A DNA stretch of 64,000 nucleotides. Source: Ophelia neglecta (lineage: Eukaryota). The notes below the pieces were generated by a model, which was not told the origin of the DNA, did no database searches, and was given only the letters and a program-made list of their open reading frames with translations. Each line of letters opens with the position of its first letter. Position 1 is the stretch's first letter. The DNA is taken from positions 22,754,001 through 22,818,000 of the forward strand of contig OZ260666.1 in NCBI GenBank assembly GCA_965285935.1, read 5' to 3'. Shown here piece after piece: positions 32,660 to 64,000 of this stretch. Made by a program: the position numbers and the translations under genes.

Positions 32660-34738
32660 TTAAATATATGCTGGGACCATTCTACTCATTTTATGCGGAA
32701 GCTTCAAATCACACATTTCCCACTCATCGGCCTTAATGTCATATCTTTGTATACAGTCTAGCTTGGTTTTGTCGTTTTGACTATAACCCCCGATGATATA
32801 AAACCAGTTATTAATCCTGACAGTGCAACCAAATTTGCAAGCCAACTTAGGAGGTGAGAGTTTCGTCCACTGATCTTGGATTATATCATAGCACTCTGCT
32901 GACATGACATCTTTCCATTTACCCTCTAAGAACACTCCTCCACCAACCACTATCAGCATACCCACCACACTAGTCATGGCATGGCACTGACGTACTTGTA
33001 ACATTGGAGACTTTTCAACCCAAACATTGTCACAGAAGCTAAACAATGTTTTAGTTTCACTTCCTCCACTGATGTACAGAACTCCGTCTTCATAAGACGC
33101 AGCATGCTTAACACGTGCTCTGGGCATTGGCACCATTCGAGCCCATTTCTTTTTTCTCACGTCATACTTCTCCACACAGACTAAATGGGTTTTGTCGACC
33201 GATCCACCAACAGCCAAAAGGGAATCATCAACTGTTGTCAAAGTGTGGTTGCGTCGTTTCTGTCGCATCTCTTCTAGTTCCAGCCATGTGTGTGAACGAG
33301 AGTCAAGCCGGAACATCGTATTTACACAGCCAGATTCGTTTTCACCACCAGAAACAAATATAAATCCTTCCATAGTAGCACAAGCACTGTTAAATAAGGC
33401 GAACGGGGTTTCACAAACATCAGTAAAAGGTGACAGGGATACGTTGCCTTTTAAATGGGTAACTTTTGACGCCACAACTTTTTTTATAGAATTATTAGAT
33501 GAATCATGTCCCCCCATGATGTAAATGGTTGAATTCTTCAGTCGTAGTTTGTTAATGTTTCCCTCTGCTACTCGTGGGTCATTTGGCCTTAAATGGTACC
33601 TCATGGCAGATACATATATATCATTACAACCTTGTAAAGCGTGCTCTGATATTACTTCTTCCATTTCTTCTTTCGTCATCAGACCAAATCTTATCAGACC
33701 GACTACTCTACGGTTTGTTTCAGCACTTGTATTGTTGTGTTTGATCCATTTCACCACCGTTTTGAAAATATCAATTTCTGATACTTTTCCTAAATAGTCA
33801 CTGTCCAGCATCAGGCAGAGTTCATCCTCAGAAATGTCCAGAGACAGATCCTTGAAGGCATGTAGACATAACTGGTTGAGATACGTCACAGACTCAGACG
33901 CAGCATACTGCTTGGCCCACTTCAAGGCGAGTGAAGTACCTTAGGCTGTAGGGGATGTTTTCACCAAACCTTCTACACAAGCTTTAATAAGGCCAACAAA
34001 ATTTATTTCCAGTGACAACTCTGTCAATGCTATGATGGATGTTTCAGTGGCTTCTTTTGGTATGATCAGTTTATCTCCTGGTTGCACAATATCTCGCATT
34101 GCAACGAAAGTATTTTTGTAATTTGTAATTTCACGTGTCTCTGCTAATATTACCTCAAGAAAGACATTCATTGCGTAACATATGTTATTGTCAGACAACG
34201 TCCCATGTTCTAGAATCTCCCCGATGAAGGCAGCGTCCAATCCTTTGATGATTGCTTCCTTGGGAACTTTAGTAATATTATCTAAAATCAGATTAGGCAC
34301 AAATTCCTTTGGTTGGACAGACCGAGGATGTATGAAAGCTGCTCGCAGGAAGTGACACCAAATATTTGCATTGGCATTTGTATTCAAGGCAAAGTTTAAA
34401 CACTCCTGCACTACGTCCAGGAACTCCAGACCCAGAGCAGCGTCGATGACATGTTCAAAGTTATCTTCAGAGATCGTAATCTCTCCAGAGTAACAATAAT
34501 CTACAATGAGCTGTAAACCTTTCCCCGACATGGTTTTGACGTTCAGTTGTTTCTTGTTCTGTTTCAAGAGACCAGAGACACGGTTGAACAGAGTCTGGTT
34601 ACAGGCAGCCATGTATGGTAGATGGACCCTGACCTCTCCATCCTTGGCACAGATAACTCCGTCCAGACCAATCTCCATCTCCTTCAGACGAGACATTCTC
34701 TCGTGGTACCCCAGGTAGTCTGTCGTCATTACCTTCAT
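32660..34738 (-). pseudogene. BTB-BACK-Kelch (KLHL-like) copy 1 with one in-frame stop at 33941-33943
   Basis: ORFs 33941-34738 and 32660-33925 are in the same frame and colinear with the 695-aa paralogues. ACA GCC TAA GGT here vs ACA GCT CAA GGT in copy 2. A 2-nt deletion at the extreme C-terminus gives AYI* instead of AYIYNV*. Confidence 0.85.
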
Positions 34739-34853
34739 TGTTATGATTTCCCTGCAAATATTAATTTGATCTATAGTGAGTTCATTTTTTCACATCACTA
34801 CGTTTTGCCGCCAATAGGAACCAATATGTGATTCTATCATTGGGTGTACTTTA

Positions 34854-35118
34854 CCATGTAAAAAATTACAGTTCGAAGACAACTCCCCACCTTTTGGCCA
34901 CGAGAGCTACATATTGTAGAGCTAAATTGGAGACAAATACGGCCTGTAGTAAAAGCCGAGCTATAATACGCGCCGTGTAAATAATAAAGGACTGGATTGT
35001 GAGATTAACAAAATCGGTCCATAATAAACGCTGTGTCTATAATAAAATCTGGTCTAAAATAAACGCTTTTAGCTCCCCTTAATTAACAAACGCCCGCCGA
35101 TTATTTAAGTCCATATGG
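34854..35118. mobile_element. Old Tigger/pogo-like MITE in the predicted intron 1, shared by copies 1-3 (also ~44920-45180 and ~54557-54825)
   Basis: taccatgta ... catatggta termini and internal aataaacgc repeats. Confidence 0.4.
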
Positions 35119-35134
35119 TACGTAAAGAATGAAC

Positions 35135-36825
35135 CCTGAAGACTGAGGGATCCCCAGGATGTGGAACCCCCCGATTGGAGAAACCCGAACTGACGGACGC
35201 GCAGACTGAAACTTACCAGGCTGAGAATCCCCGGACTGAGAACCCAGAATGAGTGTACCACGGACTGAGGGACCTTTGGGACAAACACCTCCGGGCTGAG
35301 AGTCCCGGACTGAGAACCCTCGGACTGAGAGCCCCTGTTCTGAAAACCTCCAGACTAGGAGTTCCTGGACTGAGAACCCTCTGACTGAGGGAGCCTCGGA
35401 CTGAAAACCCAAGGACTAAAAATACTGTGAATTAGAACCCTCGGTCTGAGGGTCCCCGGACTTGAAACCCCCGTTATTCAAGTCCTTGGACTGAGAAAGC
35501 CCGAAATGAGTTTTCCCCGGACTGATGGACACCCGGACTGAGAACCACCTGACTGAGAGACCCCTGAACTGAGGGACCACCGGACTGAAGGCGCCCGGAC
35601 TGAGAGACCCCCGGACTGAGGGACGCCCGGACTAAGAGACCACCGGATTGAAGGAGCCCGGACTGAGGGAACCCTGAACTGAGGAACCCCCGGACTGAGG
35701 GACCCCTGATTGAGAGAACCCTGAACTGAGGGACCACCGGAATGAAGGAGCCCAGACTGAGAGACCCCCTGATTGAGAGACCACTGAACTGAGGGACCAC
35801 CGGAATGAAGGCGCCCGGAGTGAGGGACCCCCGGACTGAGGAACCCCCGGACTGAGGGACCACCGAAATGAAGGCGCCTGGACTGAGAGACCCCCTGACT
35901 GAGAGACCCCTGAACTGAGGGACCACCGAAATGAAGGCGCCCGGAGTGAGGGACCCCGGGACTGAGGGACCACCGGAATGAAGGAGCCCGGACTGAGAGA
36001 CCCCCTGACTGAGAGACCCCTGAACTGAGGGACCACCGGAATGACAGAGCCCGGACTGAGGGACCTCCGGACTAATAACCACCGGAATGAGAGACCCCCG
36101 GAATGAGAGACCCCCGGACTGAAGGACCACCGGACTAATAATCACCGGACTGAGAGACCCCCGGACTGAGGGACCCCTTGGACTGAAAGACCTCCGAACT
36201 GAGAGACCACCGGACTGAGAACCACCGGACTGAGAGACCACCGGACTGAGAACCACCGGACTGAGAGACCACCGGACTGAGAACCACCGGACTGGGAGCA
36301 CCGGACTGAGGGACCCCCGGACTGAGAACCTCCGGACTGAGGGACCCCCGGACTGAGGGACCTCTTGGACTGAGAGACCTCCGGACTGAGGGACCCCCGG
36401 ACTGAGAGCCCTCCGGACTGAGGGACCACCGGACTAATAATCACCCGACTGAGGGACCCCCGGACTGAGGGACCCCTTGGACTGAGAGACCACCGGACTG
36501 AGAACCACCGGACTGAGAGACCACCGGACTGAGAACCACCGGACTGAGAGCACCGGACTGAGGGACCCCCGGACTGAGAACCTCCTGACTGAGGGACCCC
36601 CGGACTGAGGGACCTCCGGACTGAGAGACCTCCGGTCTGAGAGAGCACCGGACTAAGGGACTCCCGGACTAAGGGACCCCTGGACTGAGAGACCCCCGAA
36701 CTGAGACTCCCGGACTGAGGGACCCCTTGGACTGAGAGACTTTCGGACTGAGAGACTCCCGGACTGAGGGACCCCGGACTGAGGGACCCCGGACTGAAGG
36801 ATCCCGGACTGAGGGATCCTCGGGA
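35135..36825. repeat. GC-rich minisatellite of 15-17-bp units (GGACTGAG(A/G)GACC(A/C)CC)
   Basis: Visible directly; source of the S/P/G/V-rich spurious ORFs. Confidence 0.95.
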
Positions 36826-38019
36826 ACTTTTATTATTTAAGGAAGGTGGTGGGGGCTGGCGGGGGGAGCAAACGATGAGCTATAAAATTTTCCCGACGTG
36901 GTTGTATCAATTTTCTCGCATAAGTCATTGTTAACATATAGGCATTTGTTGCGGGGGGGGGGCGGCAAATGGAGACAGAATGGCCCAGAAGTTTACCTCC
37001 TTATGAGGCCTGATAGGGAAAATACTTTACTCCACATAGCAACTCGGCCGACCCCGCCGGACCCTCATCACCCCATCTAATATCTTCTCTCCCTGTTTCC
37101 GCCTCTTGTTTGAATGCATGTGCTTTCGTTTTCCCGAATCTCAAGACAGTGAAAACCTAGACTCGTGGAAAAGCCGAGGTCCTGCTCGGAATTCGACCTT
37201 TAGCCGTAACATTAAGCTGATAGCATGCACGTACGCCAGCCTTATAAGATAATTTATATTATTATATCGTCCTTTCAACCAAGGAATAAAACTTCTGCAT
37301 TTTTTCTACTACCGGTATTATTGAGTTGTTGAGAACCTGCATAGCGATGAGGAAGTTTGGGAAGCTCTTGTCTTAGACTTTAGTCTTAGAAAAGAAATAG
37401 TATAAAAGCCATTGATTTCTCTGATTTAAATAGGCTAGCAACTAAAGTCTACATATCGTTTTCTCTGTGTATGGCCAATGTGTTCAGAAGAAAAAGAGGT
37501 AGGCCTATATATATGAACGCATGGGGGTCAGTCACGTGGTTTTGAATTTCTATTATATTAAGATGATCCTAAAGTCTAGTAATGATGCTACCATGCTAGC
37601 TCATACAACCAGGTCAATGTCAGATGGTGTATATTTATGCACGGCAACCCTTACCCCCCCCCCTTCCCTACCTCCGCCCTACCTACCTTTCAGGTAATAT
37701 GTCTTATTCCATATCTTGTTCCATATCTCCCACGTTGTGACCTTAATAAACAATCATTGGAATATAGATCCCCCTTCCGGTGAATGGTAAGCCCATGATG
37801 CTAGAGAAATTACTTTTTAAAAATGAATCCCGCGCTCACGTACTTTGTAGTTTAGACCTTAATTGTAAATACTTGATATTGGGGAAGTGGGTTGGATTTC
37901 AAGGACCTACCATGCATCGAGAGTCATGCCCCCCTTCACTTCCTGTACTAAGAGCTCCGGGTTCAGAAGCTGAAAAGCGTCAGCCATCCAACCCTCCCAC
38001 TCCTACCCCCCCCCCCCCC

Positions 38020-38870
38020 CAGGACTAAGGACCCATGGACTGAGAGACACCCGGACTGAGAGCCCCCGGACTGAAAACCCAAGACTGATTGACCCCCGGA
38101 CTCAGAACCAGCGGGGACTGAGAGACCCCGGGGACTGAGAGACCCCCGGGGACTGAGAGACCCCCGGGGACTGAGAGACCCCCGGGGACTGAGAGACCCC
38201 CGGGGACTGAGAGACCCCCGGGGACTGAGAGACCCCCGGGGACTGAGAGACCCCGGGGACTGAGAGACCCCCGGGGACTGAGAGACCCCGGGGACTGAGA
38301 GACCCCCGGGGACTGAGACCCCCGGGGACTGAGAGACCCCGGGGACTGAGAGACCCCGGGGACTGAGAGACCCCCGGGGACTGAGAGACCCCCGGGGACT
38401 GAGAGACACCCGGGGACTGAGAGACACCCGGGAACTGAGAGACCCCCGGGGACTGAGAGACCCTCGGAGTGAGAGACCCTCGGAGTGAGAGACCCCCGGG
38501 GACTGAGAGACCCCAGGGGACTGAGAGACCCCCGGGGACTGAGAGACCATCCAGATTGAGAGCCCCCGGACTGAAAACCCCAGACTGATTGACCCCCGGA
38601 CTCAGAACCAGCGGGGACTGAGAGACCCCCGGGGACTGAGAGACCCCCGGGGACTGAGAGATCCCCGGGGACTGAGAGACCCCCGGGGACTCAGAGACCC
38701 CCGGGGACTTAGAGACCCCCGGGGACTCAGAGACCCCCGGGGACTCAGAGACCCCCGGGGACTCAGAGACCCCCGGGGACTCAGAGACCCCCGGGGACTG
38801 AGAGACCACCGGGGACAGAGAGACCCCTGGGGACTGAGAGACCCTCGGAGTGAGAGACCCCGGGAGTGAC
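38020..38870. repeat. 17-18-bp minisatellite (GGGGACTGAGAGACCCC(C))
   Basis: Visible directly; contains an internal duplication around gattgacccccggactcagaaccagc (about 38087 and 38587). Confidence 0.95.
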
Positions 38871-39356: not shown

Positions 39357-39580
39357 CAACTTTATGAAGAATTCCCTTCAACGAGGTAAGGAATGGCGAA
39401 ATTATATCGGAGAAACAAGCTATCCTCTCAAATGGGTTTGATGTGTTATCCTTGGTATGTCGTGATCTATAATCCGATAGTTGTAAGAAACGATGTACTT
39501 TATAACTGGGTGTCTGTCTTTGCTGGGCGGTAATAGGTGACACACTTCTGAGAAACGAGAAATAGGGAATTTCCATTACT
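39357..39580 (-). promoter_or_regulatory. Putative promoter and non-coding exon 1 of kelch copy 1: NF-kB site, IRF-like site, TATA box, donor
   Basis: GGGAATTTCC 39565-39574; GAAACGAGAAA 39552-39562; minus TATAAA 39499-39504; minus donor G|GTAAGT at 39356. Matching acceptor TTTGCAG (34752) lies 13 nt upstream of the ATG. Confidence 0.6.
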
Positions 39581-40029
39581 CATAAACTCGCCATGTTTAG
39601 CGGTGTAGAACTCGTTAAATGTATAAGCATGTAAACATGACAAATTGTGCTACGCTATAGCCGTCTGTTAGCTGCGGATCAATATTTAGTGAGACGGACT
39701 AAATGTACGCTGGCCTTCTTTATGTTAGAGTATCAAGTGACGAATAGCCACAGATTACTGAAAATATAGGAAAGTACTGAAAAATAGTCTAATACGTCGT
39801 GTAAATTTACAGTAATAAAATAATCATGTAAATGAAAATACTTGATTATCAGTAGCCTAGATTAGTGGGAATGTGCCGCGCTGAGGGGGGGCAGCAGATG
39901 GGGGGGCGAGTATTGACAAGGCAGGCGAAATTGAGGTCTGTGTGTTTCTCAGAATCTACTGGGATAAGATCACCATGTAGTCAAAGCGTCAACATCTAAG
40001 TATATGCTAAAGGACCAGACACCGGAAAT

Positions 40030-42717: not shown

Positions 42718-44805
42718 TCAAACATTATAAATATATGCTGTGACCATACTACTCATTTTATTCGGAAGCTTCAAATCACACATTTCCCACTCATCGGCCT
42801 CGATGTCATATCTTTGTATACAGTCTAGCTTGGTGTTGTCGTTTTTACAATAACCTCCGATGATATAAAACAAGTTATTAATCCTGACAGAGCAACCCAA
42901 ATAACAAGCAAACGTAGGAGGCGAGAGTTCCGTCCACTGATCTTGTATTATATCATAACACTCTGCTGACATGATATCTTTCCATTTACCCTCCATTGAC
43001 ACTCCTCCACCAACCACTACCAGCATACCAACCGCACTAGTCATGGCATGGCACTGACGTACTTGTAACATTGGAGACTTTTCAATCCAAACGTCGTCAC
43101 AGAAGCTAAACAATGTTTTAGTTTTACTACCACCACTGATGTACAGAACTCCGCCTTCATAAGACGCAGCATGCTGAGCTCGTGCTCGTGGCATTGGCAC
43201 CATTCGTGCCCATTTCTGTTTTCGCACGTCATATTTCTCCACACAGACTAAAAGGGTTTTGTGGTCCGATCCACCAACAGCGAAAACGGAATCATCACAT
43301 GTTGTCAAAGTGTGCCAGCATCGTTTCTGTCCCATCTCTTCTAGTTCCAGCCATGCGTTTGAACGAGAGTCAAGCCGGAACATCGTATTTACACAACCAG
43401 ATTCGTTTTGACCACCAGAAACAAATATATATCCATTCATCTCAGCACAAGCACTGCCGATTAATGCGAACGGGGTTTCACAAACATCAGTAAAAGGTGA
43501 CAGGGATACGTTGTCTTTTAAATGGGTAACCTTTGCCGTCAAAACATTTTTGATACAATTATTAGATGAATCTTGTCCCCCCATGATGTAAATGGTTGAA
43601 TGCTTCAGGCGTAGTTTGTTAATGTTTCCCTCGGCTAGTTGTGGGTCATTTGGCCGTAAATGGTACCTCATGGCAGATACATATTTATCATTACATCCTT
43701 GTAAAGGGTGCTCTAATACTACTTCTTCCATTTCTTCTTTCGCCATCAGACCAAATCTTATCAGACCGACTACTCTACGGTTTGTTTCAGCACTTGTATT
43801 GTTGTGTTTGATCCATTTCACTACCGTTTTGAAAATATCAATTTCTGATATTTTTCCTAAATAGTCACTGTCCAGCATCAGGCAGAGTTCATCCTCAGAA
43901 ATGTCCAGAGACAGATCCTTGAAGGCATGTAGACATAACTGGTTGAGATAAGTCACAGACTCAGACCCAGCATACTGCTTGGCCCACTTCACGGCGAGTG
44001 AAGTACCTTGAGCTGTAGGGGATGTTTTCACCAAACCTTCTACACAAGCTTTAATAATGCCAACAAAATTTATTTCCAGTGACAACTCTGTCAATGCTAT
44101 GATGGATGTACCAGTGGCTTCTTTTGGTATGATGAGTTTATCTCCTGGTTGCGCAATATCTCGCATTGCAACGAAAGTATTTTTGTAATTAGTAATTTCA
44201 CCTGTCTCTGCTAATATTACCTCAAGAAAGACATTCATTGCGTAACACCTGTTATTGTCAGACAACGTCCCATGTTCTAGAATCTCCCTGATGAAGGCAG
44301 CGTCCAATCCTTTGATGATTGCTTCCTTAGGAACTTTAGTAATATTATCTAAAATCAGATTAGGAACAAATTCCTTTGGTTGGACTGACCGAGGATGTTT
44401 AAAAGCAGCTCGCAGAAAGTGACACCAAATATTTGCATTAGCATCTGTATTCAAGGCAAAGTTTAAACACTTTTGCACTATGTCCAGGAACTCCAGACCC
44501 AGAGCAGCATCAATGATGTGTTCAAAGTTATCTTCAGAGATCGTAATCTCACCAGAGTAACAATAATCTACAATGAGCTGTAAACCTTTACCCGACATGG
44601 TTTTGACGGCCAGTTCTTTCTTGTTCTGTTTCAAGAGACCAGTAATACGGTTGAACAGAGTCTGGTTACAGGCAGCCATGTATGGTAAATGGACCCTGAC
44701 CTCTCCATCCTTGGCACAGATAACTCCGTCCAGACCAATCTCCATCTCCCTCAGACGAGACATTCTCTCATGGAACCCCAGGTAGTCTGTCGTCGTTACC
44801 TTCAT
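42718..44805 (-). CDS. BTB-BACK-Kelch (KLHL-like Cul3 adaptor) copy 2, 695 aa, single coding exon
   Basis: BTB (VHLPYMAAC...LIVDYCYSGEITISEDN), BACK (LMLDSDYLGKISEIDIFKTVVKWIKHN...LIRFGLM) and six kelch repeats with GG...Y/W motifs. Acceptor at 44819-44820. Confidence 0.93.
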   Translation of the reverse strand: MKVTTTDYLGFHERMSRLREMEIGLDGVICAKDGEVRVHLPYMAACNQTLFNRITGLLKQNKKELAVKTMSGKGLQLIVDYCYSGEITISEDNFEHIIDAALGLEFLDIVQKCLNFALNTDANANIWCHFLRAAFKHPRSVQPKEFVPNLILDNITKVPKEAIIKGLDAAFIREILEHGTLSDNNRCYAMNVFLEVILAETGEITNYKNTFVAMRDIAQPGDKLIIPKEATGTSIIALTELSLEINFVGIIKACVEGLVKTSPTAQGTSLAVKWAKQYAGSESVTYLNQLCLHAFKDLSLDISEDELCLMLDSDYLGKISEIDIFKTVVKWIKHNNTSAETNRRVVGLIRFGLMAKEEMEEVVLEHPLQGCNDKYVSAMRYHLRPNDPQLAEGNINKLRLKHSTIYIMGGQDSSNNCIKNVLTAKVTHLKDNVSLSPFTDVCETPFALIGSACAEMNGYIFVSGGQNESGCVNTMFRLDSRSNAWLELEEMGQKRCWHTLTTCDDSVFAVGGSDHKTLLVCVEKYDVRKQKWARMVPMPRARAQHAASYEGGVLYISGGSKTKTLFSFCDDVWIEKSPMLQVRQCHAMTSAVGMLVVVGGGVSMEGKWKDIMSAECYDIIQDQWTELSPPTFACYLGCSVRINNLFYIIGGYCKNDNTKLDCIQRYDIEADEWEMCDLKLPNKMSSMVTAYIYNV

Positions 44806-45184
44806 TGTTATGATTTCCCTGCAAATATTAATTTGATCTATAGTAAGTTCATTTTTTCACATCACTATGATTTTCTCCCAATAGGAACCAATATGTGATT
44901 CTATCATCGGGTGTACTAGTACCATTTGAAAAATTACAGTACGAAGTCAACTCCCCACCTATAGGCCACGAGGGCTACATATTGTAGAGCTAAATTGGAG
45001 ACAAATACGGCCTGTAGTAAAAGCCGAGCTATAATACGCGCCGCGTCCATAATAAAGGACTGGATAATGAGATCTGTCTATAATAAACGCTGTGTCCATA
45101 ATGAAATCTGGTCTAAAATAATTGCTTTTAGCTCCCCTTAATTAATAAACGCCCGCCGATTATTTAAGTCAATATGGTACGTAA

Positions 45185-46342
45185 AGACTGAACCCTGAAG
45201 ACCGATGGATCCCCAGGATGTGGAACCCCCCGATTGGAGACCCCCGAACTGGCGGACGCGCAGACTGAAAATTACCAGGCTGAGAACCCAGATTGAGTGT
45301 ACCACGGACTGAGGGACCCCCGGGCCAAACACATCCGGGCTGAGAATCCCCTGACTGAGAACCCAGATTGAGTGTACCACGGACTGAGGGACCCCCGGGC
45401 CAAACATATCCGGGCTGAGAATCCCCTGACTGAGAACCCTCGGACTGAGAACCCCTGTTCTGAAAACCTCCAGACTAGGAGTTCCTGGACTGAGAACCCT
45501 CTGACTGAGGGAGCCTCGGACTGAAAACCTAAGGACTAAAAATACTGTGAATTAGGACCCTCGGACTGAGAGACCCCGGACTTAAAACCCCCGTTATTCA
45601 AGTCCTTGGACTGAGAAAGCCCGAAATGAGTTTTCACCGGACTGATGGACCCCCGGACTGAGAACCACCTGACTGAGAGACCCCTGAACTGAGGAACCAC
45701 CGGACTGAAGGCTCCCGGACTGAGAGACCCCCGGACTGAGGGACCCCCGGACTGAGGGACCCCCGGACTGAAGGACCACCGGACTGAAGGCGCCCGGACT
45801 GAGAGACCACCGGACTAATAACCACCGGACTAAGAGACCCCCAGACTGAAGGACCCCTTGGACTGAGAGACCTCCGGATTGAGAGCACCGGACTGAGGGA
45901 CCCCCGGACTGAGAACCACCGGACTGAGAGACCACCGGACTGAGGGACCCCCGGACTGAGAGAGCACCGGACTGAGAGACCACCGGACTGAGGGACCCCC
46001 GGACTGAGAACCACCGGACTGAGAGACCACTGGACTGAGGGACCACCGGACTGAAGGCACCCGGACTGAGAGACCCCCGGACTGAGGGACGCCCGGACTG
46101 AGAACCACCGGACTGAGGGACCCCCGGACTGAGAGACCTCCGGACTGAGAGAGCCCCGGACTGAGAGACCCCGGGGCTGAGGGACCCCCGGACTGAGAGG
46201 CCTCCGGACTGAGAAACCCCGGGACTGAGGGACCCCCGGACTGAGAGACCTCCGGACTGAGAGACCTTTGGACTGAGAGACCTCCGGACTGAGAGACCTT
46301 TGGACTGAGAGAGCACCGGACTGAGGGACCCCGGACTGAGGG
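45185..46342. repeat. GGACTGAG minisatellite, paralogue of 35135-36825
   Basis: Same units and same flanks. Confidence 0.95.
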
Positions 46343-48040
46343 AACTTTTATTATTTAACGCCAGGAAGGTGGTGGTGGCTGGGGGGGGGGGAGCAAACGA
46401 TGAGCGATAAAATTTTCCCGACGTGGTTGTATCAATGTTCTCGCATATAGGCATTTGTGGCGGGGGGGGGGGGGCAAATGGAGACAGAATGGCCCAGAAG
46501 TTTACCTCCTTATGAGTTCTGATAGGGAAAATAGTTTACTCCACATAGCAACCCGACCGATCCCGCCGGACCCTCATCACCCCTTCTAATATCTTCCCTC
46601 CCTGTTTCCGCCTCTTGTTTGAATGCATACATGTGCTTTCGTGTTCCCGAATCCCGAGACAGTGAAAACCTAGACTCTTGCAAGCGATAACACGTAGGCC
46701 GAGGTTCTGCTCGGAATCCGACCTTTAGCCGTAACATTAAGCAGATAGCATGCACGCACGCCGAAAGAATTTATATTATTATCTCGTACTTTCAACCAAG
46801 GAATATAACTGCTGCGTTTATTGCAATATTAAGTAGTAAAAACCTTCATATAGATGAGGAAGTTTGGGAAGCTCTTGTTTTAGACTTGAGTCTTAGAAAA
46901 GAAGTAGTTTAAAAGCCTCGATCTGATTTAAATAGGTCAGAAACTTAAGTCTACATATCGTGTTCTCTGTGTATGTCCAATGTATTCAGAAGAAAAAGAG
47001 GTATATATATCGACGCATGGGAGTCAGTCACGTCGTATTGAATTTTATTATATTAAGATGATCCTAAAATCTAGTAATGATGCTGCCATGCCAGCTCATA
47101 CAACCAGGTCAATGGCAGATGGTGTATATTTATGCACGGCAACCCCTACGACCCCCTACCACCCCCAACCCTCCCCTCCCCCTACATACTGTACAGTATC
47201 AAATGGCCCGTCACTTAAGAAACCTCAAATTAATGCAACACATCAACTTGGTAGTTACAAATACAGAAAAAACATGGAAAGTTATGTATCGCACATTTGG
47301 TTTATCAGTTTTTCAGCTTAATTTATCAAGATACAAATTCTCTCCCTAGGTACAATTATAATAATACGATTATAAAAGCCGTGCCGCCCGGTGTATCACG
47401 GGACATTTGGATAGAAATACAAGTGTATAAGCTCCATTATGATCCGTTTGGATTATATATATATGTATGTATGTATGTATCCAAATGGTCATCCACACAT
47501 ATTTCCGAAAAGCTGTCATATGTACCGGATTACCATGATCTTTGTATAAGAACCAGTATAATAGCCATCTTGTTCCATATTTCCCTCGTTGTGACCTTGA
47601 TAAACAATTATTGGAATACAGACCCCCCTTCCGGTGGATGGTGATCACAGGACGCTGGAGAAATTACTTTTTGAAAATGAATTGCGCGCTCACATACTTT
47701 GTAATCTAAACCGTATATTGTGTTCTTTTGTATAATTTGTTCTTTTGGTGGATATTGGTGGTGTGGGTTGGATGTTGGATCTTCCATGCACCGAGAGTTA
47801 TGCCCCCCTCCCCTTCCAACGTCCTCTACTAAAACCTCCATTATCAGAACCCCCGAGACTAAAAGCGTCAGACATCCTAAAGTTAATATGTCAGCTAGAC
47901 CTAAAACAGGAGACTATCACCTGGGCTGATGACTTGTCCCGCTATAACGTTGAGACATATAATATAGATCTTCTGGCTACAATGTGTAATGGTAGATTTA
48001 ACAATCAGTGTGGTAATACAGCTAGTAAAATGGCACTTAC

Positions 48041-48270
48041 CAGATTAATTAACAAATCCCTTCAACGAGGTAAGAAATGGCGAAAATATATCGGAGAAAC
48101 AAACTATCCTCCCAAATGGGTTTGATGTGTTATCCTTGGTATGTCGTGATGTATAATCAGATAGTTGTTAGATACGATGTACTTCAACTTTATAACTGTA
48201 TGTCTATAGTTGCTAGGCAGTAACATGTGACACACTTATGAAACCCGAGAAATAGGGAATTTCCATTACT
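48041..48270 (-). promoter_or_regulatory. Putative promoter and non-coding exon 1 of kelch copy 2
   Basis: GGGAATTTCC 48255-48264; minus TATAAA 48189-48194; minus donor G|GTAAGT at 48040. Confidence 0.6.
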
Positions 48271-49378: not shown

Positions 49379-49477
49379 TCCAATAATATTACCTGTAAGG
49401 TAGGTATGGTGGGGGTAGGGAGGTGGAGGGGAGGGGGGGGGTAGGGGTTGCAATACAATCTTAGTTAGCGCTATATA

Positions 49478-49775
49478 GGGCTGAGAGACGCCCGGGCTGA
49501 GAGACGCCCGGGCTGAGAGACACCAGAGCTGAGAGACCCCAGGGCTGAGAGACTCCAGGGCTGAGAGACCCCAGGGCTGAGAGACCCCAGGGCTGAGAGA
49601 CGCCCGGAATAAGAGACCCCCAGGCTGAGAGACCCACGGGCTGAGAGACCCCAGGGCTGAGAGACCCCCGGGCTGAGAGACCCCAGGGCTGAGAGACCCC
49701 ATGGCTGAGAGACCCCAGGGCGTAGAGTCCTCAGTTATGGGAGCCCTTAGTACTGCGAGCCCCCAGGGCTGAGCT
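49478..49775. repeat. 16-bp minisatellite variant (GGGCTGAGAGACCCCA)
   Basis: Visible directly. Confidence 0.9.
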
Positions 49776-49820
49776 TTAGCCCTTTGAACAATATCCACCT
49801 GCAGACAGGCACATCTTTTT

Positions 49821-52345: not shown

Positions 52346-54433
52346 TCATTTATTATCAATACATGCTCCGACCGACCGACTCATTTTGTATGGTAGTTTG
52401 CAATTACACACTTCCCATTCATTGGCCTCGATGTTAAACCTTTGAATACAGTCTAGCTTAGTTTTGTCGTTTTGACTATAACCCCCGATGATATAAAACC
52501 AGTTATTAATCCTGACAGAGCAACCTAAACCGCAAGCAAACTTAGGAGGCGAGAGTTCCGTCCACTGATCTTGTATTATATCATAGCACTCTGCTGACGT
52601 CACGTCATTCCATTTACCGTCCAACTTCACACCTCCACCAGCAACTACCAGCATACCAACCACACTAGTCATGGCATGGCACTGACGTACTTGTAACATT
52701 GGAGACTTTTCAACCCAAACGTTGTCACAGAAGCTATACAGTGTCTTAGACTGACTACCTCCACTGATATACAGAACTCCGTCTTCATAAGACGCAGCAT
52801 GCTGACCTCGTGCTCTGGGCATTGGCACCAAAAGTGCCCATTTCTTTTTTCGCGCGTCATATTTCTCCACACAGACTAATGGGGTTTCGCCGTCCCATCC
52901 ACCAACAGCGAAAAGGGAATCACCACATGTTGTCAGAGTGTGCCTGCATCGTTCCTGTCCCATCTCTTCTAGTTCCAGCCATACGTTTGAACGAGAGTCA
53001 AGCCGGAACATCGTATTTACACAGCCAGATTCGTTTTCACCACCAGAAACAAATATAAATCCATCCATAGTAGCACAAGCACTGTTAAATAAGGCGAACG
53101 GGGTTTCACAAGCATCAGTAAAAGGTGACAGGGATACGTTGCCTTTTAAATGGGTAACTTTTGACGCCAAAACTTTTTTTATATAATTATTAGATGAATC
53201 TTTTCCCCCCATGATGTAAATGGTCGAATGCTTCAAGCGTAGTTTGTTAATGTTTCCCTCGGCTAGTCGTGGGTCATTTGGCCTTAAATGGGACCTCATG
53301 GCTGATACAAAGATAGGCTCACAGCCAGGTAAATCGTACTCGACAAATACTTCATCCATTTCATCCTTTGTCATCAGACCAAATCTTATCAGACCGACTA
53401 CTCTACGGTTTGTTTCATCACTTGTATTATTGTGTTTGATCCATTTCACTACCGTTTTGAAAATATCAATTTCTGATATTTTTCCTAAATAGTCACTGTC
53501 CAGCATCAGGCAGAGTTCATCCTCAGAAATGTCCAGAGACAGATCCTTGAAGGCATGTAGACATAACTGGTTGAGATAGATCACAGACTCAGACACAGCA
53601 TACTGCTTGGCCCACTTCAATGCGTGTGAAGTAACGTCAGGTGTAGGGGACGTTTCTATCAAAACATCTACACAGGCTCCAATAAGACCAGCAAAGTTTA
53701 TTTCCAGTGACATTTCAATCAAAGCTATGATGGATGTTCCATTGTCTTCAGTTATTATGGTCAGATTATCATCTGGCTGCACAATATCTCGCATGCGACA
53801 GAGAGTATCTTTGTAATTTGAAAGTTCACCTGCTTCCGCTAGTAGTACCTCCAGAAAGACATTCATTGCGTAACACCTGTTATTTGCAGACAATGTCCCA
53901 TGTTCTAGAATCTCCCCGATAAAGGCAGCATCCAATCCTTTAAAGACTGCTTCCTTGGGAACTTCAGTAATATTATCTAAAATCAGATTGGGAACAAATT
54001 CCTTTGGTTGGACTGACCGAGGATGTTTAAAAGCTGCTCGCAGGAAGTGACACCAAATATTTGCATTGGCATCTGTATTCAAGGCAAAGTTTAAACACTC
54101 CTGCACTATGTCCAGGAACTCCAGACCCAGAGCGGCATCAATGACGTGTTCAAAGTTATCTTCAGAGATCGTAATCTCACCAGAGTAACAATAATCTACA
54201 ATGAGCTGTAAACCTTTACCCGACATGGTTTTGACGGCCAGGTCTTTCTTGTCCTGTTTCCAGAGACCAGTAATACGGTTGAACAGAGTCTGGTTACAGG
54301 CAGCCATGTATGGTAGATGGACCCTGACCTCTCCATCCTTGGCACAGATAACTCCGTCCAGACCGATCTCCATCTCCCTCAGACGAGACATTCTCTCATG
54401 GAACCCCAGGTAGTCTGTCGTTGTTACCTTCAT
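52346..54433 (-). CDS. BTB-BACK-Kelch copy 3, 695 aa, single coding exon
   Basis: Same architecture as copy 2 with an intact ORF; acceptor at 54447-54448. Confidence 0.93.
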   Translation of the reverse strand: MKVTTTDYLGFHERMSRLREMEIGLDGVICAKDGEVRVHLPYMAACNQTLFNRITGLWKQDKKDLAVKTMSGKGLQLIVDYCYSGEITISEDNFEHVIDAALGLEFLDIVQECLNFALNTDANANIWCHFLRAAFKHPRSVQPKEFVPNLILDNITEVPKEAVFKGLDAAFIGEILEHGTLSANNRCYAMNVFLEVLLAEAGELSNYKDTLCRMRDIVQPDDNLTIITEDNGTSIIALIEMSLEINFAGLIGACVDVLIETSPTPDVTSHALKWAKQYAVSESVIYLNQLCLHAFKDLSLDISEDELCLMLDSDYLGKISEIDIFKTVVKWIKHNNTSDETNRRVVGLIRFGLMTKDEMDEVFVEYDLPGCEPIFVSAMRSHLRPNDPRLAEGNINKLRLKHSTIYIMGGKDSSNNYIKKVLASKVTHLKGNVSLSPFTDACETPFALFNSACATMDGFIFVSGGENESGCVNTMFRLDSRSNVWLELEEMGQERCRHTLTTCGDSLFAVGGWDGETPLVCVEKYDARKKKWALLVPMPRARGQHAASYEDGVLYISGGSQSKTLYSFCDNVWVEKSPMLQVRQCHAMTSVVGMLVVAGGGVKLDGKWNDVTSAECYDIIQDQWTELSPPKFACGLGCSVRINNWFYIIGGYSQNDKTKLDCIQRFNIEANEWEVCNCKLPYKMSRSVGACIDNK

Positions 54434-55059
54434 TGTTATGATTTCCCTGCAAATATTTATTTGATCTATTGTAAGTAAGTTCTTTTTTTCACATAACTAT
54501 GATCCTCTCCCAATAGGAACCAACCAATATGTGATTCTCTCATCGGGTGTACTTTTACCATGTGAAAAATCACAGTTCGAAGACAACTCCCCACGTATAG
54601 GCCACGAGAGCTACATATTGTAGAGCTAAATTGGAGACAAATACAACCTTTAGTAAAAACCGAGCTATAATACGCGCCGGGTCAATAATAATTGACTGGA
54701 TTGTGAGATTAACAAAATCGGTCTAAAATAAACGCCGTGACTATAATGAATTACGGCCTCAAATAAACGCCGGGTCTATTAGCTCCCCGTTATTTCTAAA
54801 CGCTCGCCGATTATTTTAGTGTATACTGCTGAAGCCCCCCCCCCCCTTGCCAAAGCTCCACTGTTCAAGAGTCCTCTAGAATGACGAACCCACACATTAC
54901 TGAAGACCCCCCCCCCCTCTGACTGAGAGCCTCCAAACAGAGAGCACCATGACCCAAGAAACCCTGGGCATTGATGCAGAGGCTGTTGCACCTCTCTCAC
55001 CGCAACGAGAAAACGCAAAATGCCCCCCCCCCCCACGCCCCCCGCGACCTGGACTCTGA

Positions 55060-55950
55060 AAGAACGATCACCGGATTGAGGATCCCTGTAATAAATCGGT
55101 GGGATAGTGGACCACCTGACTAAAGGCTCCCCAGACTGTGAGTCCTCGGACTGAGAACACATCAGACTGAATCTCAGTCCGAGAGCTTTGTCTAGGAATC
55201 CGACAGAACGGGAAGTTCTCGTTCCATGGGTCTTTTTAGTAGTCCGCGGATTCTCAGTCCGTGGGTTCTGGCTCAGGGAGCCCCTGAGTCCATGCTTCTC
55301 GCTAGGGAGTCCCTTAATTCGGTGGGTTCCCACTCCTGGGTTTGGAGGGCTATCATTCCGGGTTCCCTCTCGGGTTGGGAGCCCCCAGTCAGGGGTCTTT
55401 CAGTCCGTGGTCCCTCATTCCGAAGATCCCTCCGGGAGTCTATTCCCGAACCTCAGACTGAGGGATCCTCAGGACGAGGAACCCCTGGACGGAGAAACCC
55501 GGACTGTCGGACACGCAGACTGAAAAGTACAACGCTGAGTGAACCCCGGACTGAGTGACCCCCAGACCGAAAACCTCCGAACTGAGAGTCCCAAGACTGA
55601 GAACCCTCGGATTGAGAGACCCCCGGACTGAGGGACCCCCGGACTGAGAGACCCCCGGACTGAGAGACCCCCGGACTGAGAGACCCCCGGACTGAGAGAC
55701 CACTGGACTGAGAGACCACTGGACTGAGAGACCCTCGGACTGAGAGGACCCCGGACTGAGAGACCACTGGACTGAGAGACCACTGGACTGATGGACCCCG
55801 GACTGAGAGACCATCCTACTGAAGGACCCAGGACTGGGAGACGCCCGGATGGAGGGACCACCGGACTGAGAGACCATCGGACTGAGAAACCCTTAGACTG
55901 AGAGACCCCTGGACTGAGAGACCATCGGACTGAGGGACCATCGGACTCTC
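55060..55950. repeat. GGACTGAG minisatellite of copy 3, including an inverted block at ~55250-55440
   Basis: ggactgag units on +, with ctcagtcc-type units in the inverted block. Confidence 0.85.
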
Positions 55951-58774: not shown

Positions 58775-59000
58775 CAGATTAATCAACAATCCTCTTCAAC
58801 GAGGTAAGGAATGGCGAAATTATATCCGAGAAACAAGCTTTCCTCTCAAATGGGTTTGATGTGTTATCCTTGGTATGTCGTGATGTATAATCGGACAGTT
58901 GTGTAAGATACGATGTACTTTATAGCCGCGTGTCTATTTTTGCTGGGCGGTAACATGTGACACACTTCTGAAAAACGAGAAATAGGGAATTTCCATTACT
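58775..59000 (-). promoter_or_regulatory. Putative promoter and non-coding exon 1 of kelch copy 3
   Basis: GGGAATTTCC 58985-58994; minus TATAAA 58919-58924; minus donor G|GTAAGT at 58774. Confidence 0.6.
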
Positions 59001-61480: not shown

Positions 61481-61489
61481 GCCGCATTA

Positions 61490-62450
61490 TAATGTAAATT
61501 GGCACCTATTGCGAACCAATGTCTTACAATTTCTAGTTTGAAAACACAATTTAGTGAAAACTCTGTTAGACACTGGCTTGCCCAAAAATCGTCACTAAAG
61601 GAGCAGCCTAAGATCAGAACTTATTCGTTATTTAAATCCTCTTTTGAATTGGAGCTGTACACAAAATATGTTTCTGAATATAAATACAGGCACATAGTTA
61701 CAAGATTAAGGCTAATCAGTCATAACTTGGAGATAGAGGGTGGTTACCACACTAGGCCTAAGACTCCAGCACACCTTAGGTTGTGCAAACTTTGTAATGA
61801 TGATGTGGAGGACGAGAAGCATATCTGCTAACTTTTGGGGCTCTTCATGAAACTAGATCATTTTCATGTCGAAATTATTAAACCTCTCGTCGCCTTTTGT
61901 AAACTTCTCTGGTGACGAGAAATTTATTTACCTTATGCCATCAAAAGATCTCAACATTGTGCACGTTGTAGCAAGGATGGTGTTTTCGTCGTTTCGGGTG
62001 AGAGATGAATATCTCTTGCCCTTAGTAGCCAAGCTATCTTTGAATTGAACTGAATTTAATGATATTTAGTTCGTGTCATCGAGATACCTGAAAACTATGC
62101 ATGTTGTAGCAGTGACGGTTTCCTCGGTGTTTCGGGTGTGAGTTGAATATCTCTCGTCTGGGGCAGCGACAGCGCTATCCTTGAATTGAATTTAATGGTG
62201 TGTGTGTGTGTGTGTACATGTGTTGCATGATCTTGTGACGGATGAATGTTAGCGTGCTTCGTGCTTTTATTTGATACTTTTTTTGTATGTGTTCTATATT
62301 AATTGAATGGGCGTCCCTAAAAATAGGCCTATATGTAAGGGAAAAATACTGTAATCTGTGCTTGTGTGTGCATGAGTGTAAATGCGACTACTCTATTTTA
62401 AAATGTAGATTATAAGTCAGTGATGACTTCAATAAATTGTTTATCCTTAT
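61490..62450 (+). mobile_element. 3' end of a non-LTR retrotransposon (RTE-X-like C-terminus) plus 3' UTR
   Basis: KIRTYSLFK...RLRLISHNLEIEGG...RLCKLCNDDVEDEKH matches the C-terminal Cys/His motif of LINE ORF2; AATAAA at ~62431. Clade call is tentative. Confidence 0.75.
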
Positions 62451-63743
62451 TTATGTCCCTGCTAAATGAGGGAATTTCAATGTTTCTCCATTTCCTAGTA
62501 TTGATTTGGTTTTTTGCACCACGGGGATCTTTGAAACATCAACACTACACAAAATGACACATACATGAAGCTGACAATGCATATACAGTTGTACTGGTAT
62601 AGAACTGCGAACTGGTATTTGTAGGCCTGAGCCAGACGGTACCAGATGATTTCAGACATATCTAGGTATCTCCCCTGGTTTTTTAAAGCCAGTTTCCAGA
62701 TAAAGGATTTCGTTTTATATGCCGGGTATACGAACCTGCTTAACCGCTTATTAATGATTGGCGGGAATTTACGTACGACTCCTAACTATGAAAAAACCGT
62801 TCAAATCAAGAAATGTAACCGTTTTTATTGGCTATTATCGATGCACTTAGCACCAAAATTAATAATACATTAACACACAGATTAAATGGTCTACTGCATT
62901 CAATTTACCAAGTAACCTTAGTGGCAATACGTTTATGCCAAAGAAGTGAAAATGTCATCAAACATAATCAAAGAAAATGTTTAAATCTCCCAAAACGTGA
63001 ACAATCTAATTCGGACAAAGTAAATACTAGCGGTTTTAATTCAACAGATGCAAAAGGTCTACTCATGTTGCGACTCACAAAACATAGTCAAAGACGATTT
63101 TTGAAAAATTAAATATCATTAACACTGAATGAACAATGCTGAATAATGTTATCATTACTTTATATATGTATGTACTGATCCCCAATAGATAAAATCATAT
63201 GTATAGGTACATATTTTAGGTAATAGAAAACGTACTAATATCAAGCTTTAGTCATCCTATCTAAATAAAATTAAGTATATGCTCAAGTGCAAGATGGATG
63301 TATAAAAAAACACCGATAATGCATGAATGAAAACATGGATGAATGCACTTATAAACTAAATACTACAACAAAAACCGACGATGGATTTGTGGTAGGTTGG
63401 AGATTTAAGTCTGCTCATAACCATGGGTTTCATCACTTTCTTATCTTAGAATTAAACCTGAAACAAAACGTAACGTAACCCCAAGACATAATTCCCAACT
63501 CTTAGAACTTCTTAGAACTTCAGCCTGGATCTTAGAGAAAGACCACTGCACCCTTCTGTGTCATTTTCGGTATTGGTATAAAAAATCATAACAGTCTGTT
63601 TCTGATAAATATAATTCAGCCTTATCTATTTTTTTCCGGCAGCATCAAATTGTTTGACGGTCGCATCAATAAATTTGTTTTTAGCTTAAAAGTTACTTTC
63701 TGGAACACAGTGACTTGGATATTTCAATTATACAAATTGTACT

Positions 63744-64000
63744 TCAAACATTATAAATATATGCTGTGACCATTCTACTCATTTTATACGGAAGCTTCAA
63801 ATCACACATTTCCCACTCATCGGCCTCGATGTTATATCTTTGTATACAGTCTAGCGTGGTGTTGTCGTTTTGACTATGACCTCCAATGATATAAAACCAG
63901 TTTTTTATCCTGACTGAGCAACCCAAACCGCAAGCAAACTTAGGAGGCGAGAGTTCCGTCCACTGATCTTGTATTATATCATAACACTCTGTTGACATAA
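63744..64000 (-). CDS. BTB-BACK-Kelch copy 4, C-terminal end only (runs off the window)
   Basis: ECYDIIQDQWTELSPPKFACGLGCSVRIKNWFYIIGG...VTAYIYNV*. The 3' flank matches those of copies 1 and 2. Integrity of the rest is unknown. Confidence 0.85.
   Translation of the reverse strand, partial: MSTECYDIIQDQWTELSPPKFACGLGCSVRIKNWFYIIGGHSQNDNTTLDCIQRYNIEADEWEMCDLKLPYKMSRMVTAYIYNV

What the first reader, a model, noticed from the sequence alone, without database searches (positions are those of the whole stretch)
32660..64000. Tandem array of BTB-Kelch genes diversifying at the substrate-binding face: candidate Cul3-based intracellular immune receptor family
Seen: at least four near-identical paralogues at 9.6-11.4 kb spacing. 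Kelch differences cluster right after each GG and around the conserved Arg of the inter-blade loop. Copies 1/2/3 read GG[H/Q/K]DSSNN[S/C/Y]; AL[FN/IG/FN]S; M[RQKRRN/GQKRCW/GQERCR]H; GG[SVDKTH/SDHKTL/WDGETP]; RAR[VK/AQ/GQ]H; GGS[ET/KT/QS]; GGGV[FLE/SME/KLD]; C[KF/YL/GL]G; GG[YSQ/YCK/YSQ, copy 4 HSQ]. The BTB and BACK cores and most strands differ little. Known: in KLHL propellers such as KEAP1 and KLHL3 these DA and BC loops form the substrate pocket, and conserved cullin-binding plus variable substrate-binding domains is the pattern of nematode F-box and MATH-BTB expansions proposed to target pathogen proteins. Inference: an analogous birth-and-death Cul3 adaptor repertoire in this animal.
Basis: partly seen in the sequence, partly recalled or inferred. 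Interest (0 to 1): 0.85.

Follow-up and report, generated by a model that had tools for sequence, protein, structure and literature searches.

The report
Diversifying BTB-Kelch gene array
This animal carries about thirty tandem copies of a BTB-Kelch protein whose ligand-binding pocket is under strong diversifying selection while the rest stays constant; that looks like a recognition repertoire, but its ligase partner, expression and targets are still unknown.

Summary
The window carries four single-coding-exon BTB-BACK-Kelch genes on the minus strand. They are 81-88% identical, not near-identical. Copy 1 has an in-frame stop at codon 266. They belong to a family on this chromosome of 20 intact and at least 10 broken copies, in three clusters.

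Within the four window copies alone, clustering of differences in the top loops is weak (p=0.06). Across 21 copies it is strong:
- M1a versus M2a gives 2dlnL of 76 and 73 for the two Kelch halves.
- Every blade is significant on its own tree.
- Null simulations with recombination reach at most 26.
- 13 codons have omega of about 4. Twelve lie in BC or DA loops, one per DA loop, and ten fall in a pre-defined set of 30 KEAP1-contact-equivalent positions (p=7e-9).
- The BTB domain has dN/dS 0.16.

So diversifying selection on the substrate face is supported.

"Cul3-based" is not shown. The phi-x-E motif reads L-K-Q, and three KLHL3 residues essential for Cul3 binding all differ.

"Immune" rests only on a conserved kB-like site and TATA box upstream. 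No RNA data exist. A reproductive role, as in the termite KLHL10 expansion, is not excluded.

The scan's first readers flagged the same family in another cluster (s1-736067).

The parts
32660..34738 (-). Copy 1: BTB-BACK-Kelch reading frame. It is full length apart from a single in-frame TAA at codon 266 (33941-33943), so it is a recent pseudogene or a null allele.
   Evidence: translation; Pfam; L002, 1 TAA
42718..44805 (-). Copy 2: intact 695-aa single-exon CDS. BTB is at residues 1-120, an extended helical BACK region at 121-395, and a six-blade Kelch propeller at 403-692. Codons with posterior probability of omega>1 above 0.9: 411, 449, 497, 513, 518, 543, 561, 585, 603, 635, 654, 686, 689.
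   Evidence: AF2 model, pLDDT 89.5; Foldseek: KEAP1/KLHL3 TM 0.9, KLHL22-CUL3 as top hit
52346..54433 (-). Copy 3: intact 695-aa CDS.
   Evidence: L011
63744..64000 (-). Copy 4: the last 85 codons plus the stop codon. The rest lies beyond the window and is intact (L010).
39357..39574 (-). Putative promoter and non-coding exon 1 of copy 1. A kB-like GGAAATTCCC sits at 39565-39574, TATAAAG about 65 nt downstream, and a G|GTAAGT donor follows with the exon ending at 39357.
   Evidence: Sequence evidence only, no transcript data.
48041..48264 (-). The same promoter and exon 1 module for copy 2 (kB-like site 48255-48264, donor at 48041).
58775..58994 (-). The same promoter and exon 1 module for copy 3 (kB-like site 58985-58994, donor at 58775).
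44806..44825 (-). Conserved acceptor-like TTTGCAG ending 13 nt before the ATG. The same sequence sits before the ATG of copies 1 and 3 (34739-34758 and 54434-54453). It implies a 1.2-4.6 kb intron in the 5'UTR.
35450..38810 (.). GC-rich 16-nt minisatellite arrays inside the putative 5'UTR intron of copy 1. Equivalent arrays lie at 45570-46410 and 55470-55950. They account for the variable unit length.

Best explanation
The four genes belong to a lineage-specific family of about 30 copies. Each copy has a single coding exon and encodes a BTB, extended BACK and six-blade Kelch protein.

The family evolves by tandem duplication, gene loss and gene conversion. The BTB domain is held constant. Thirteen codons on the top face of the propeller, one ring of DA-loop positions and one of BC-loop positions around the central pocket, are driven to diversify with omega of about 4. 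This part is shown.

The inferred mechanism is as follows. Each paralogue presents a differently shaped Kelch pocket. The family therefore acts as a repertoire of substrate receptors for fast-changing protein ligands, and hands those ligands to a shared partner bound by the invariant BTB. That partner is most likely the Cul3 ubiquitin ligase.

A conserved kB-like site and TATA box upstream of a non-coding first exon make inducible, defence-type use the leading guess for the biological role. Both the role and the Cul3 coupling are inferences.
For: Family and turnover:
- 63 matches in the genome. 20 copies are intact at 692-695 aa. At least 10 are broken by stops or frameshifts. All lie in three clusters on one chromosome.

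Architecture:
- Pfam finds BTB, BACK and Kelch.
- The AF2 model has pLDDT 89.5 and six blades.
- Foldseek matches KEAP1 and KLHL3 Kelch domains at TM 0.90-0.93 and rmsd about 2.1 A. Full-length KLHL22-CUL3 is the top hit.

Constraint gradient (pairwise dN/dS):
- BTB 0.16, strands 0.38, bottom loops 0.51, top loops 0.66.
- 30 pre-defined KEAP1-contact-equivalent sites: 0.91.

Site models (my own ML implementation):
- M1a versus M2a gives 2dlnL of 76.4 for codons 396-545 and 72.9 for codons 546-695. Omega2 is 4.1-4.5 on 5-7% of sites. The three N-terminal segments give only 7-9.
- With a separate tree per blade, every blade is significant and the sum is 137.8.
- M1a null simulations with three different trees per segment give a maximum of 9.3 and 26.5 in 13 replicates each.

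Location of the selected codons:
- 12 of 13 lie in BC or DA loops (p=6.5e-5).
- 10 of 13 lie in the pre-defined 30-site set (p=7e-9).
- None lies in a bottom loop.
- Up to 11 different residues occur at a single site.

Local rates: dN at the 13 sites is 0.96, against dS of 0.31 in the codons flanking them.

Promoter module: found upstream of 18 of 21 copies, with the exact GGAAATTCCC decamer in 14. The window has 3 matches against 0.26 expected by chance.
Against: - No expression data exist. The only public runs holding this DNA are DNA contigs of one sample.
- The canonical Cul3 interface is not conserved. The phi-x-E motif is L58-K59-Q60, and KLHL3 A77 and M78 correspond to N52 and R53. In KLHL3, mutating A77, M78 or E85 abolishes Cul3 binding (PMC3616122).
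- As a class, the 30 pre-defined contact sites do not exceed dN/dS of 1 (0.91, CI 0.57-1.47). The claim of positive selection therefore rests on the site models.
- Recombination is real and does inflate the LRT (4 of 13 null replicates exceeded 5.99 for the C-terminal half).
- My site-model code is not PAML or HyPhy.
- The kB-like site sits in a block that is conserved throughout, so it has no footprint of its own.
Confidence: 0.6

Rival explanations
1. This is a reproductive or germline-conflict family. The array would be a testis- or gamete-expressed KLHL10-like expansion, and its pocket would diversify under sexual selection, sperm competition or intragenomic conflict rather than under pathogen pressure.
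For: Lineage-specific BTB-BACK-Kelch expansion tied to spermatogenesis is documented in the termite Zootermopsis (37 against 10 genes; PMC4348803). Positive selection, tandem amplification and rapid pseudogenisation are also typical of reproductive gene families. No expression data argue against this reading.
Against: A perfect kB-like decamer about 65 nt upstream of the TATA box is kept in most copies. The best full-length solved match by sequence and fold is KLHL22, followed by KLHL20 and KEAP1; no KLHL10 structure appeared among the listed matches. Neither point is decisive.
Confidence: 0.2
2. The family is not a Cul3 adaptor. The divergent BTB would serve only for oligomerisation or for another partner, and the Kelch repertoire would act by sequestration or scaffolding rather than by ubiquitination.
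For: The phi-x-E motif reads phi-x-Q in all 20 paralogues, in the 51%-identical gene L028 and in the 33-35% relatives P0005 and P0006, whereas typical KLHLs read M-[RK]-E. Positions equivalent to KLHL3 A77, M78 and E85 all differ. A helical insert of about 130 residues splits the BACK region.
Against: Glutamine can keep hydrogen bonding, and a hydrophobic phi residue (L58) is retained. The BTB is the most constrained part (dN/dS 0.16), as expected for a shared essential partner. The genome has a canonical Cul3 with a human-like H2 helix. The whole-protein fold matches Cul3-bound KLHL22 and KBTBD2.
Confidence: 0.25
3. There is no adaptive diversification. The loop variability would be relaxed constraint in redundant duplicates, and the omega>1 signal would be an artefact of gene conversion or wrong trees.
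For: Segment trees conflict with high bootstrap support. Recombination inflates the LRT in simulations. The pre-defined contact-site class has dN/dS of 0.91, not above 1. Synonymous divergence is also higher in BC loops (0.44 against 0.25 in strands).
Against: The observed LRTs (76 and 73) are 3-8 times the largest null value with recombination. All six blades are significant on their own trees. The selected codons are isolated inside constrained loops: flanking codons have dN/dS of 0.44. They also sit at structurally equivalent positions in every blade, which neutral decay does not predict.
Confidence: 0.07

Closest known systems
KLHL / BTB-BACK-Kelch Cul3 substrate adaptors (KEAP1, KLHL3, KLHL20, KLHL22)
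   Same: The domain order is the same and the propeller has six blades. The fold matches KEAP1 and KLHL3 at TM about 0.9 and full-length KLHL22-CUL3. The hypervariable codons fall at the residue after each GG doublet and at the first or second residue after the conserved DA-loop Arg. Those are the positions that line the KEAP1 and KLHL3 substrate pocket (plus my own knowledge of KEAP1 contact residues).
   Different: Sequence identity to any solved KLHL is only about 20-25%. The phi-x-E motif is phi-x-Q, and the residues equivalent to A77 and M78 are N and R. A helical insert of about 130 residues lies within BACK. The coding region is a single exon. The family is a tandem array of about 30 copies, whereas vertebrate KLHLs, to my knowledge, are mostly single conserved orthologues.
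Nematode MATH-BTB (bath) and F-box adaptor expansions under positive selection (Thomas 2006, Genome Res; cited in PMC4091423 and PMC4334554)
   Same: These are large lineage-specific tandem families of ubiquitin-ligase substrate adaptors. The ligase-binding domain is conserved and positively selected sites concentrate in the substrate-binding surface. They were proposed to target pathogen proteins.
   Different: The recognition module here is a Kelch propeller, not MATH or FTH/FBA. The ligase-binding motif departs from the consensus. The pathogen link has not been demonstrated for these genes.
TRIM5alpha and fish finTRIM B30.2 repertoires (PMC3137616)
   Same: These are multi-copy E3-linked intracellular receptors in which diversifying selection is concentrated in a few surface loops of the recognition domain.
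   Different: The fold is unrelated (RING, B-box, coiled coil and SPRY). Those families are known antiviral effectors with expression and functional data. None exists here.
Termite KLHL10-type BTB-BACK-Kelch expansion (PMC4348803)
   Same: It is a lineage-specific multiplication of BTB-BACK-Kelch genes in an invertebrate (37 against 10).
   Different: That expansion is linked to spermatogenesis by annotation. The passages I read mention no site-specific selection analysis. Relatedness to the present subfamily was not tested.

Membership tests
BTB-BACK-Kelch (KLHL-type) protein | N-terminal BTB/POZ domain | tested here: met
   PF00651, 32-37 bits against a 20.5-bit cut-off, in all copies. phmmer hit to the KLHL3 BTB at E=1.9e-12.
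BTB-BACK-Kelch (KLHL-type) protein | BACK domain between BTB and Kelch | tested here: met
   PF07707, 38-42 bits, at residues about 273-363. An extra helical stretch of about 130 residues (about 167-270) has no Pfam match and shows no BLASTP similarity to the BACK part.
BTB-BACK-Kelch (KLHL-type) protein | Six Kelch repeats forming a beta-propeller | tested here: met
   Kelch_1 at 110-118 bits. The AF2 model has six four-stranded blades at pLDDT about 90. Foldseek matches KEAP1 and KLHL3 at TM 0.90-0.93.
Cul3 substrate adaptor | phi-x-E motif in the alpha3-beta4 region of the BTB | tested here: not met
   The motif aligns to KLHL3 M83-S84-E85 as L58-K59-Q60. Q60 is invariant in 20 paralogues. 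In KLHL3, E85A abolishes Cul3 binding (PMC3616122).
Cul3 substrate adaptor | Conserved alpha3 contact residues (KLHL3 A77 and M78; 'AMF' in typical KLHLs) | tested here: not met
   The equivalent residues are N52 and R53 ('NRI').
Cul3 substrate adaptor | Physical binding to the Cul3 N-terminal domain | not testable with these tools
   Cul3 is present in the genome but is multi-exon. The complex job with exon pieces supplied as separate chains gave no verdict.
Positively selected E3-adaptor repertoire (nematode MATH-BTB / F-box type) | Lineage-specific tandem expansion with pseudogenes (birth and death) | tested here: met
   20 intact copies, at least 10 disrupted copies and fragments, in three clusters on one chromosome. 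The nearest proteins outside the genome are at most 36% identical.
Positively selected E3-adaptor repertoire (nematode MATH-BTB / F-box type) | omega>1 confined to the substrate-binding surface, with the ligase-binding domain conserved | tested here: met
Innate immune receptor or effector family | Expression, and induction by infection | not testable with these tools
   No RNA run holds the sequence. The three holders are DNA contigs of one sample that also cover intergenic DNA.
Innate immune receptor or effector family | Immune-type cis-regulation (NF-kB/Rel site near the promoter) | tested here: inconclusive
   GGAAATTCCC lies about 65 nt upstream of TATAAAG in all three window copies and in 14 of 18 family promoters. 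The whole block is conserved, so the site has no specific footprint, and its function is untested.
Innate immune receptor or effector family | A pathogen-derived ligand | not testable with these tools
   No data.

The most novel reading that the evidence does not exclude
A germline-encoded repertoire of about 20 functional NF-kB-inducible Kelch-propeller receptors. Each would have a differently shaped pocket, recognise pathogen or mobile-element proteins inside the cell, and mark them for ubiquitination. It would be an invertebrate counterpart of TRIM5/finTRIM and nematode MATH-BTB defence, built on a BTB-Kelch scaffold with a non-canonical (phi-x-Q) ligase interface.
Probability: 0.3. Interest if true: 0.85.

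Novelty: new variant of a known kind. Interest (0 to 1): 0.6.

Why it matters
Expanded, positively selected ubiquitin-ligase adaptors are a recognised but poorly tested candidate class of intracellular immune receptors. They are known mainly from nematode MATH-BTB and F-box genes and from vertebrate TRIMs.

This family adds a Kelch-propeller version with an unusually clean signal: one hypervariable position per DA loop and per BC loop, ringing the pocket, on an invariant BTB. That gives about 20 natural pocket variants and a defined set of 13 specificity positions. Target identification by pull-down and specificity swapping become direct experiments.

The departure from the phi-x-E motif also raises a testable question: how, or whether, such adaptors engage Cul3.

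Tried and rejected
- Complex prediction, using BTB residues 1-175 with two Cul3 exon pieces as separate chains, returned no verdict (score 0.01). It is not evidence either way.
- The search for homologous proteins returned only four distant hits because candidates were capped. This says nothing about novelty.
- The look-up of sequencing runs and read laying gave only DNA contigs of one sample. Depth over the CDS reflects collapsed paralogues. There is no information on splicing or expression, and none usable on alleles or copy number.
BLASTP of residues 121-270 against 271-395 gives E=0.73, and Pfam finds nothing in 121-270. It is not supported at the sequence level, although the motif AMRDIAQPGD resembles AMRYHLRPND.
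- The first site-model script timed out. It was rerun with a faster optimiser.
- M7/M8 was not completed. M1a/M2a, the more conservative pair, was used.
- The protein-atlas search returned only generic KLHL clusters.
- The organism could not be identified with the tools, and no attempt was made to decode it.
- A viral or mobile-element origin was considered. I rejected it because each copy has a conserved promoter-like module with an apparent 5'UTR intron, the genes form a chromosomal array, and the same genome holds a 51%-identical paralogue elsewhere.
Full report
**1. What is in the window**

The minus strand carries four paralogous reading frames with start-to-start spacing of 10067, 9628 and 11398 nt.
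- Copy 2 (42718-44805) and copy 3 (52346-54433) are intact 695-codon ORFs.
- Copy 1 (32660-34738) is colinear but has one in-frame TAA at codon 266 (33941-33943).
- Copy 4 enters the window only with its last 85 codons (63744-64000). It is intact in the genome (L010).

Pfam finds BTB, BACK and Kelch repeats in all copies. The copies are not near-identical: protein identity is 81-88% and dS is 0.12-0.29.

**2. The family**

A six-frame search of the window's own genome finds 63 matches.
- 20 copies are intact, at 692-695 aa.
- At least 10 full-length copies are broken by stops or frame changes, and there are several fragments. Some frameshifts could be assembly errors.
- All lie on the same chromosome in three clusters: about 21.32-21.59 Mb, 22.79-22.82 Mb (this window) and 23.05-23.10 Mb.
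- More distant single genes lie elsewhere (51% and about 39% identity).

In a library of 1.84 billion representatives, the nearest full-length proteins are only 34-36% identical (P0005 and P0006). Both are also single-exon genes from another animal's contigs. They share the subfamily's signatures.

Window copies do not group together in the tree. Copy 1 pairs with L003, copy 3 with L007, and copy 4 with the L016 clade. Trees for different gene segments conflict with high bootstrap support. The family is therefore a mosaic shaped by gene conversion or recombination as well as by duplication and loss.

**3. Structure**

An AlphaFold2 model of copy 2 has mean pLDDT 89.5.
- BTB occupies residues 1-120.
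- A long all-helical region occupies 124-391.
- Six four-stranded blades occupy 403-692.

Foldseek puts CUL3-KLHL22 and KBTBD2-CUL3 first for the whole chain. It matches KEAP1 and KLHL3 Kelch domains at TM 0.90-0.93 and rmsd about 2.1 A.

The BACK Pfam match covers only about 273-363. About 130 extra helical residues (about 167-270) have no family match and no detectable similarity to the BACK part.

From the DSSP string and the Kelch motif I assigned strands A-D per blade. I then defined the top-face loops (BC and DA) and the bottom loops (AB and CD).

Before running site models I also fixed a set of 30 "KEAP1-contact-equivalent" positions. These are the first, third and sixth residues after each GG doublet, and the first and second residues after the conserved DA-loop Arg or its equivalent. 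The mapping of KEAP1 contact residues to those motif positions rests on my own knowledge of KEAP1. I did not check it against coordinates.

**4. Selection**

Pairwise Nei-Gojobori dN/dS over 21 gap-free aligned copies:

| Region | dN/dS |
|---|---|
| BTB | 0.16 |
| Helical region 121-395 | 0.42 |
| Kelch strands | 0.38 |
| Bottom loops | 0.51 |
| Top loops | 0.66 |
| 30 pre-defined sites | 0.91 (bootstrap 0.57-1.47) |

No pre-defined class exceeds 1 on its own.

I wrote a codon-model likelihood (GY94 with F3x4, branch proportions fixed from nucleotide trees) and compared M1a with M2a per segment, each segment on its own tree.
- The three N-terminal segments give 2dlnL of 8.0, 8.8 and 6.9.
- The two Kelch halves give 76.4 and 72.9, with omega2 of 4.1-4.5 on 5-7% of sites.

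With one tree per blade, which is conservative, all six blades are significant (p from 9e-3 to 4e-9; sum 137.8).

To calibrate for recombination, I simulated M1a data on three different sub-trees per segment and analysed them on one inferred tree.
- The LRT is indeed inflated.
- Its maxima are 9.3 and 26.5 in 13 replicates each.
- The N-terminal "signals" are therefore noise, and the Kelch signals are not.

Thirteen codons have posterior probability of omega>1 above 0.9: 411, 449, 497, 513, 518, 543, 561, 585, 603, 635, 654, 686 and 689.
- Six lie in BC loops.
- Six lie in DA loops, exactly one in each of the six DA loops.
- One lies at the start of the closing strand.
- None lies in a bottom loop.
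- Twelve of 13 in top loops gives p=6.5e-5. Ten of 13 in the pre-defined 30-site set gives p=7e-9.
- Up to 11 different residues occupy one site, with radical exchanges such as W/S/R/K at 513 and G/H/D/Y/K at 635.

At these sites dN is 0.96. The three codons on either side have dN/dS of 0.44 and dS of 0.31. They are isolated hypervariable positions within constrained loops.

Using only the four window copies, enrichment of variable residues in top loops is weak (Fisher p=0.057).

**5. The ligase side**

The genome has a canonical, multi-exon Cul3 whose H2-helix exon is almost identical to the human one.

The family's BTB departs from the Cul3-binding consensus.
- Aligned to KLHL3 (4HXI), the phi-x-E motif M83-S84-E85 corresponds to L58-K59-Q60.
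- KLHL3 A77 and M78 correspond to N52 and R53.
- Q60 is invariant in all paralogues. L028, P0005 and P0006 also have Q there, whereas typical KLHLs read M-[RK]-E.
- In KLHL3, the mutations A77E, M78V and E85A each abolish Cul3 binding (PMC3616122).

Cul3 coupling is therefore plausible but undemonstrated.
- For it: the overall fold, the retained hydrophobic phi residue, and the very strong constraint on the BTB.
- Untested: a complex prediction with Cul3 exon pieces as separate chains gave no verdict, and I do not count it.

**6. Regulation and expression**

I followed an earlier first-reader note (s1-741979) and checked it.

Each window copy has the following, 3.2-4.6 kb upstream of its ATG:
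- a conserved block of about 450 nt;
- a perfect kB-like decamer, GGAAATTCCC (3 matches in the window against 0.26 expected);
- TATAAAG about 65 nt downstream of the decamer;
- a G|GTAAGT donor about 120 nt further on;
- a conserved TTTGCAG acceptor 13 nt before the ATG.

The module is found upstream of 18 of 21 family copies, with the exact decamer in 14. The whole block is conserved, so the kB-like site has no footprint of its own.

The putative intron is filled with a 16-nt GC-rich minisatellite, which explains the variable unit length.

No RNA run holds the sequence. The three public holders are DNA contigs from one sample and also cover intergenic DNA. Expression is therefore untested.

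**7. Interpretation**

Shown:
- a lineage-specific BTB-Kelch family evolving by birth and death;
- a constant N-terminal domain;
- strong diversifying selection focused on a ring of pocket-lining loop positions.

Inferred:
- The proteins are interchangeable substrate receptors for rapidly changing ligands.
- They feed a common partner, probably Cul3.
- The conflict driving the diversification is with pathogens or mobile elements. The kB-like promoter site and a neighbouring fibrinogen-domain gene are weak hints.

A germline or reproductive conflict is an equally legitimate reading of the evolutionary data. There is precedent for BTB-BACK-Kelch expansion linked to spermatogenesis in a termite (PMC4348803).

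**8. Novelty**

The general principle is known from nematodes, plants and vertebrate TRIMs: E3-adaptor families with a conserved ligase-binding domain and a positively selected substrate surface (Thomas 2006, as cited in PMC4091423 and PMC4334554; PMC3137616).

My literature searches found no report of a Kelch-propeller version with site-resolved selection. I therefore rate it a new variant of a known kind.

The scan's first readers flagged the same family independently in the 21.5 Mb cluster (s1-736067). Those copies are included in my alignment.

Noticed in passing
window 24464-24958 (+): An ORF encodes a fibrinogen C-terminal globular domain (PF00147, E=1e-44). It is probably an exon of a fibrinogen-related protein gene about 8 kb from the array.
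   Followed up: partly
window 838-1686 (+): An ORF matches rhodopsin-family and Srw-type 7TM receptors (E=6e-15). It looks like a GPCR gene or fragment.
   Followed up: partly
window 35450-38810, 45570-46410, 49440-49780, 55470-55950: Kilobase-scale GC-rich minisatellites with a 16-nt unit (a GGTCTCTCAGTCCGGG-like unit, some arrays with 31- or 47-nt periodicity). Most lie within the putative 5'UTR introns of the Kelch genes; the 49440-49780 array lies upstream of copy 2's promoter. They create spurious long ORFs and may promote unequal exchange.
   Followed up: partly
window 5527-6239 and 19217-20640: Two further tandem arrays with periods of 31 nt and 26 nt. The second has strong GC skew (0.3). 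Both give long artefactual ORFs.
   Followed up: no
window 29776-30313: A tandem duplication of a 269-nt unit (89% identity).
   Followed up: no
copy 2 residues about 167-270 (window about 43996-44307, minus strand): A helical insert of about 130 residues sits between the first BACK helices (3-box region) and the Pfam-recognised BACK core. It is shared with L028, P0005 and P0006, so it defines a distinct BTB-Kelch subfamily together with the phi-x-Q motif. It has no detectable similarity to BACK.
   Followed up: partly
family-wide (L001-L023): Synonymous divergence rises along the gene (BTB 0.16-0.17, Kelch 0.29, BC loops 0.44). This suggests that gene conversion homogenises the 5' half, while the Kelch loops escape it or retain older lineages.
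   Followed up: partly
G000:C2:26475500-26481000 (L035): The canonical Cul3 gene. Its first three coding exons were identified, and their protein sequence is almost identical to human CUL3 over helices H1-H5. A Cul1-like gene lies at C1:81.13 Mb (L034).
   Followed up: partly
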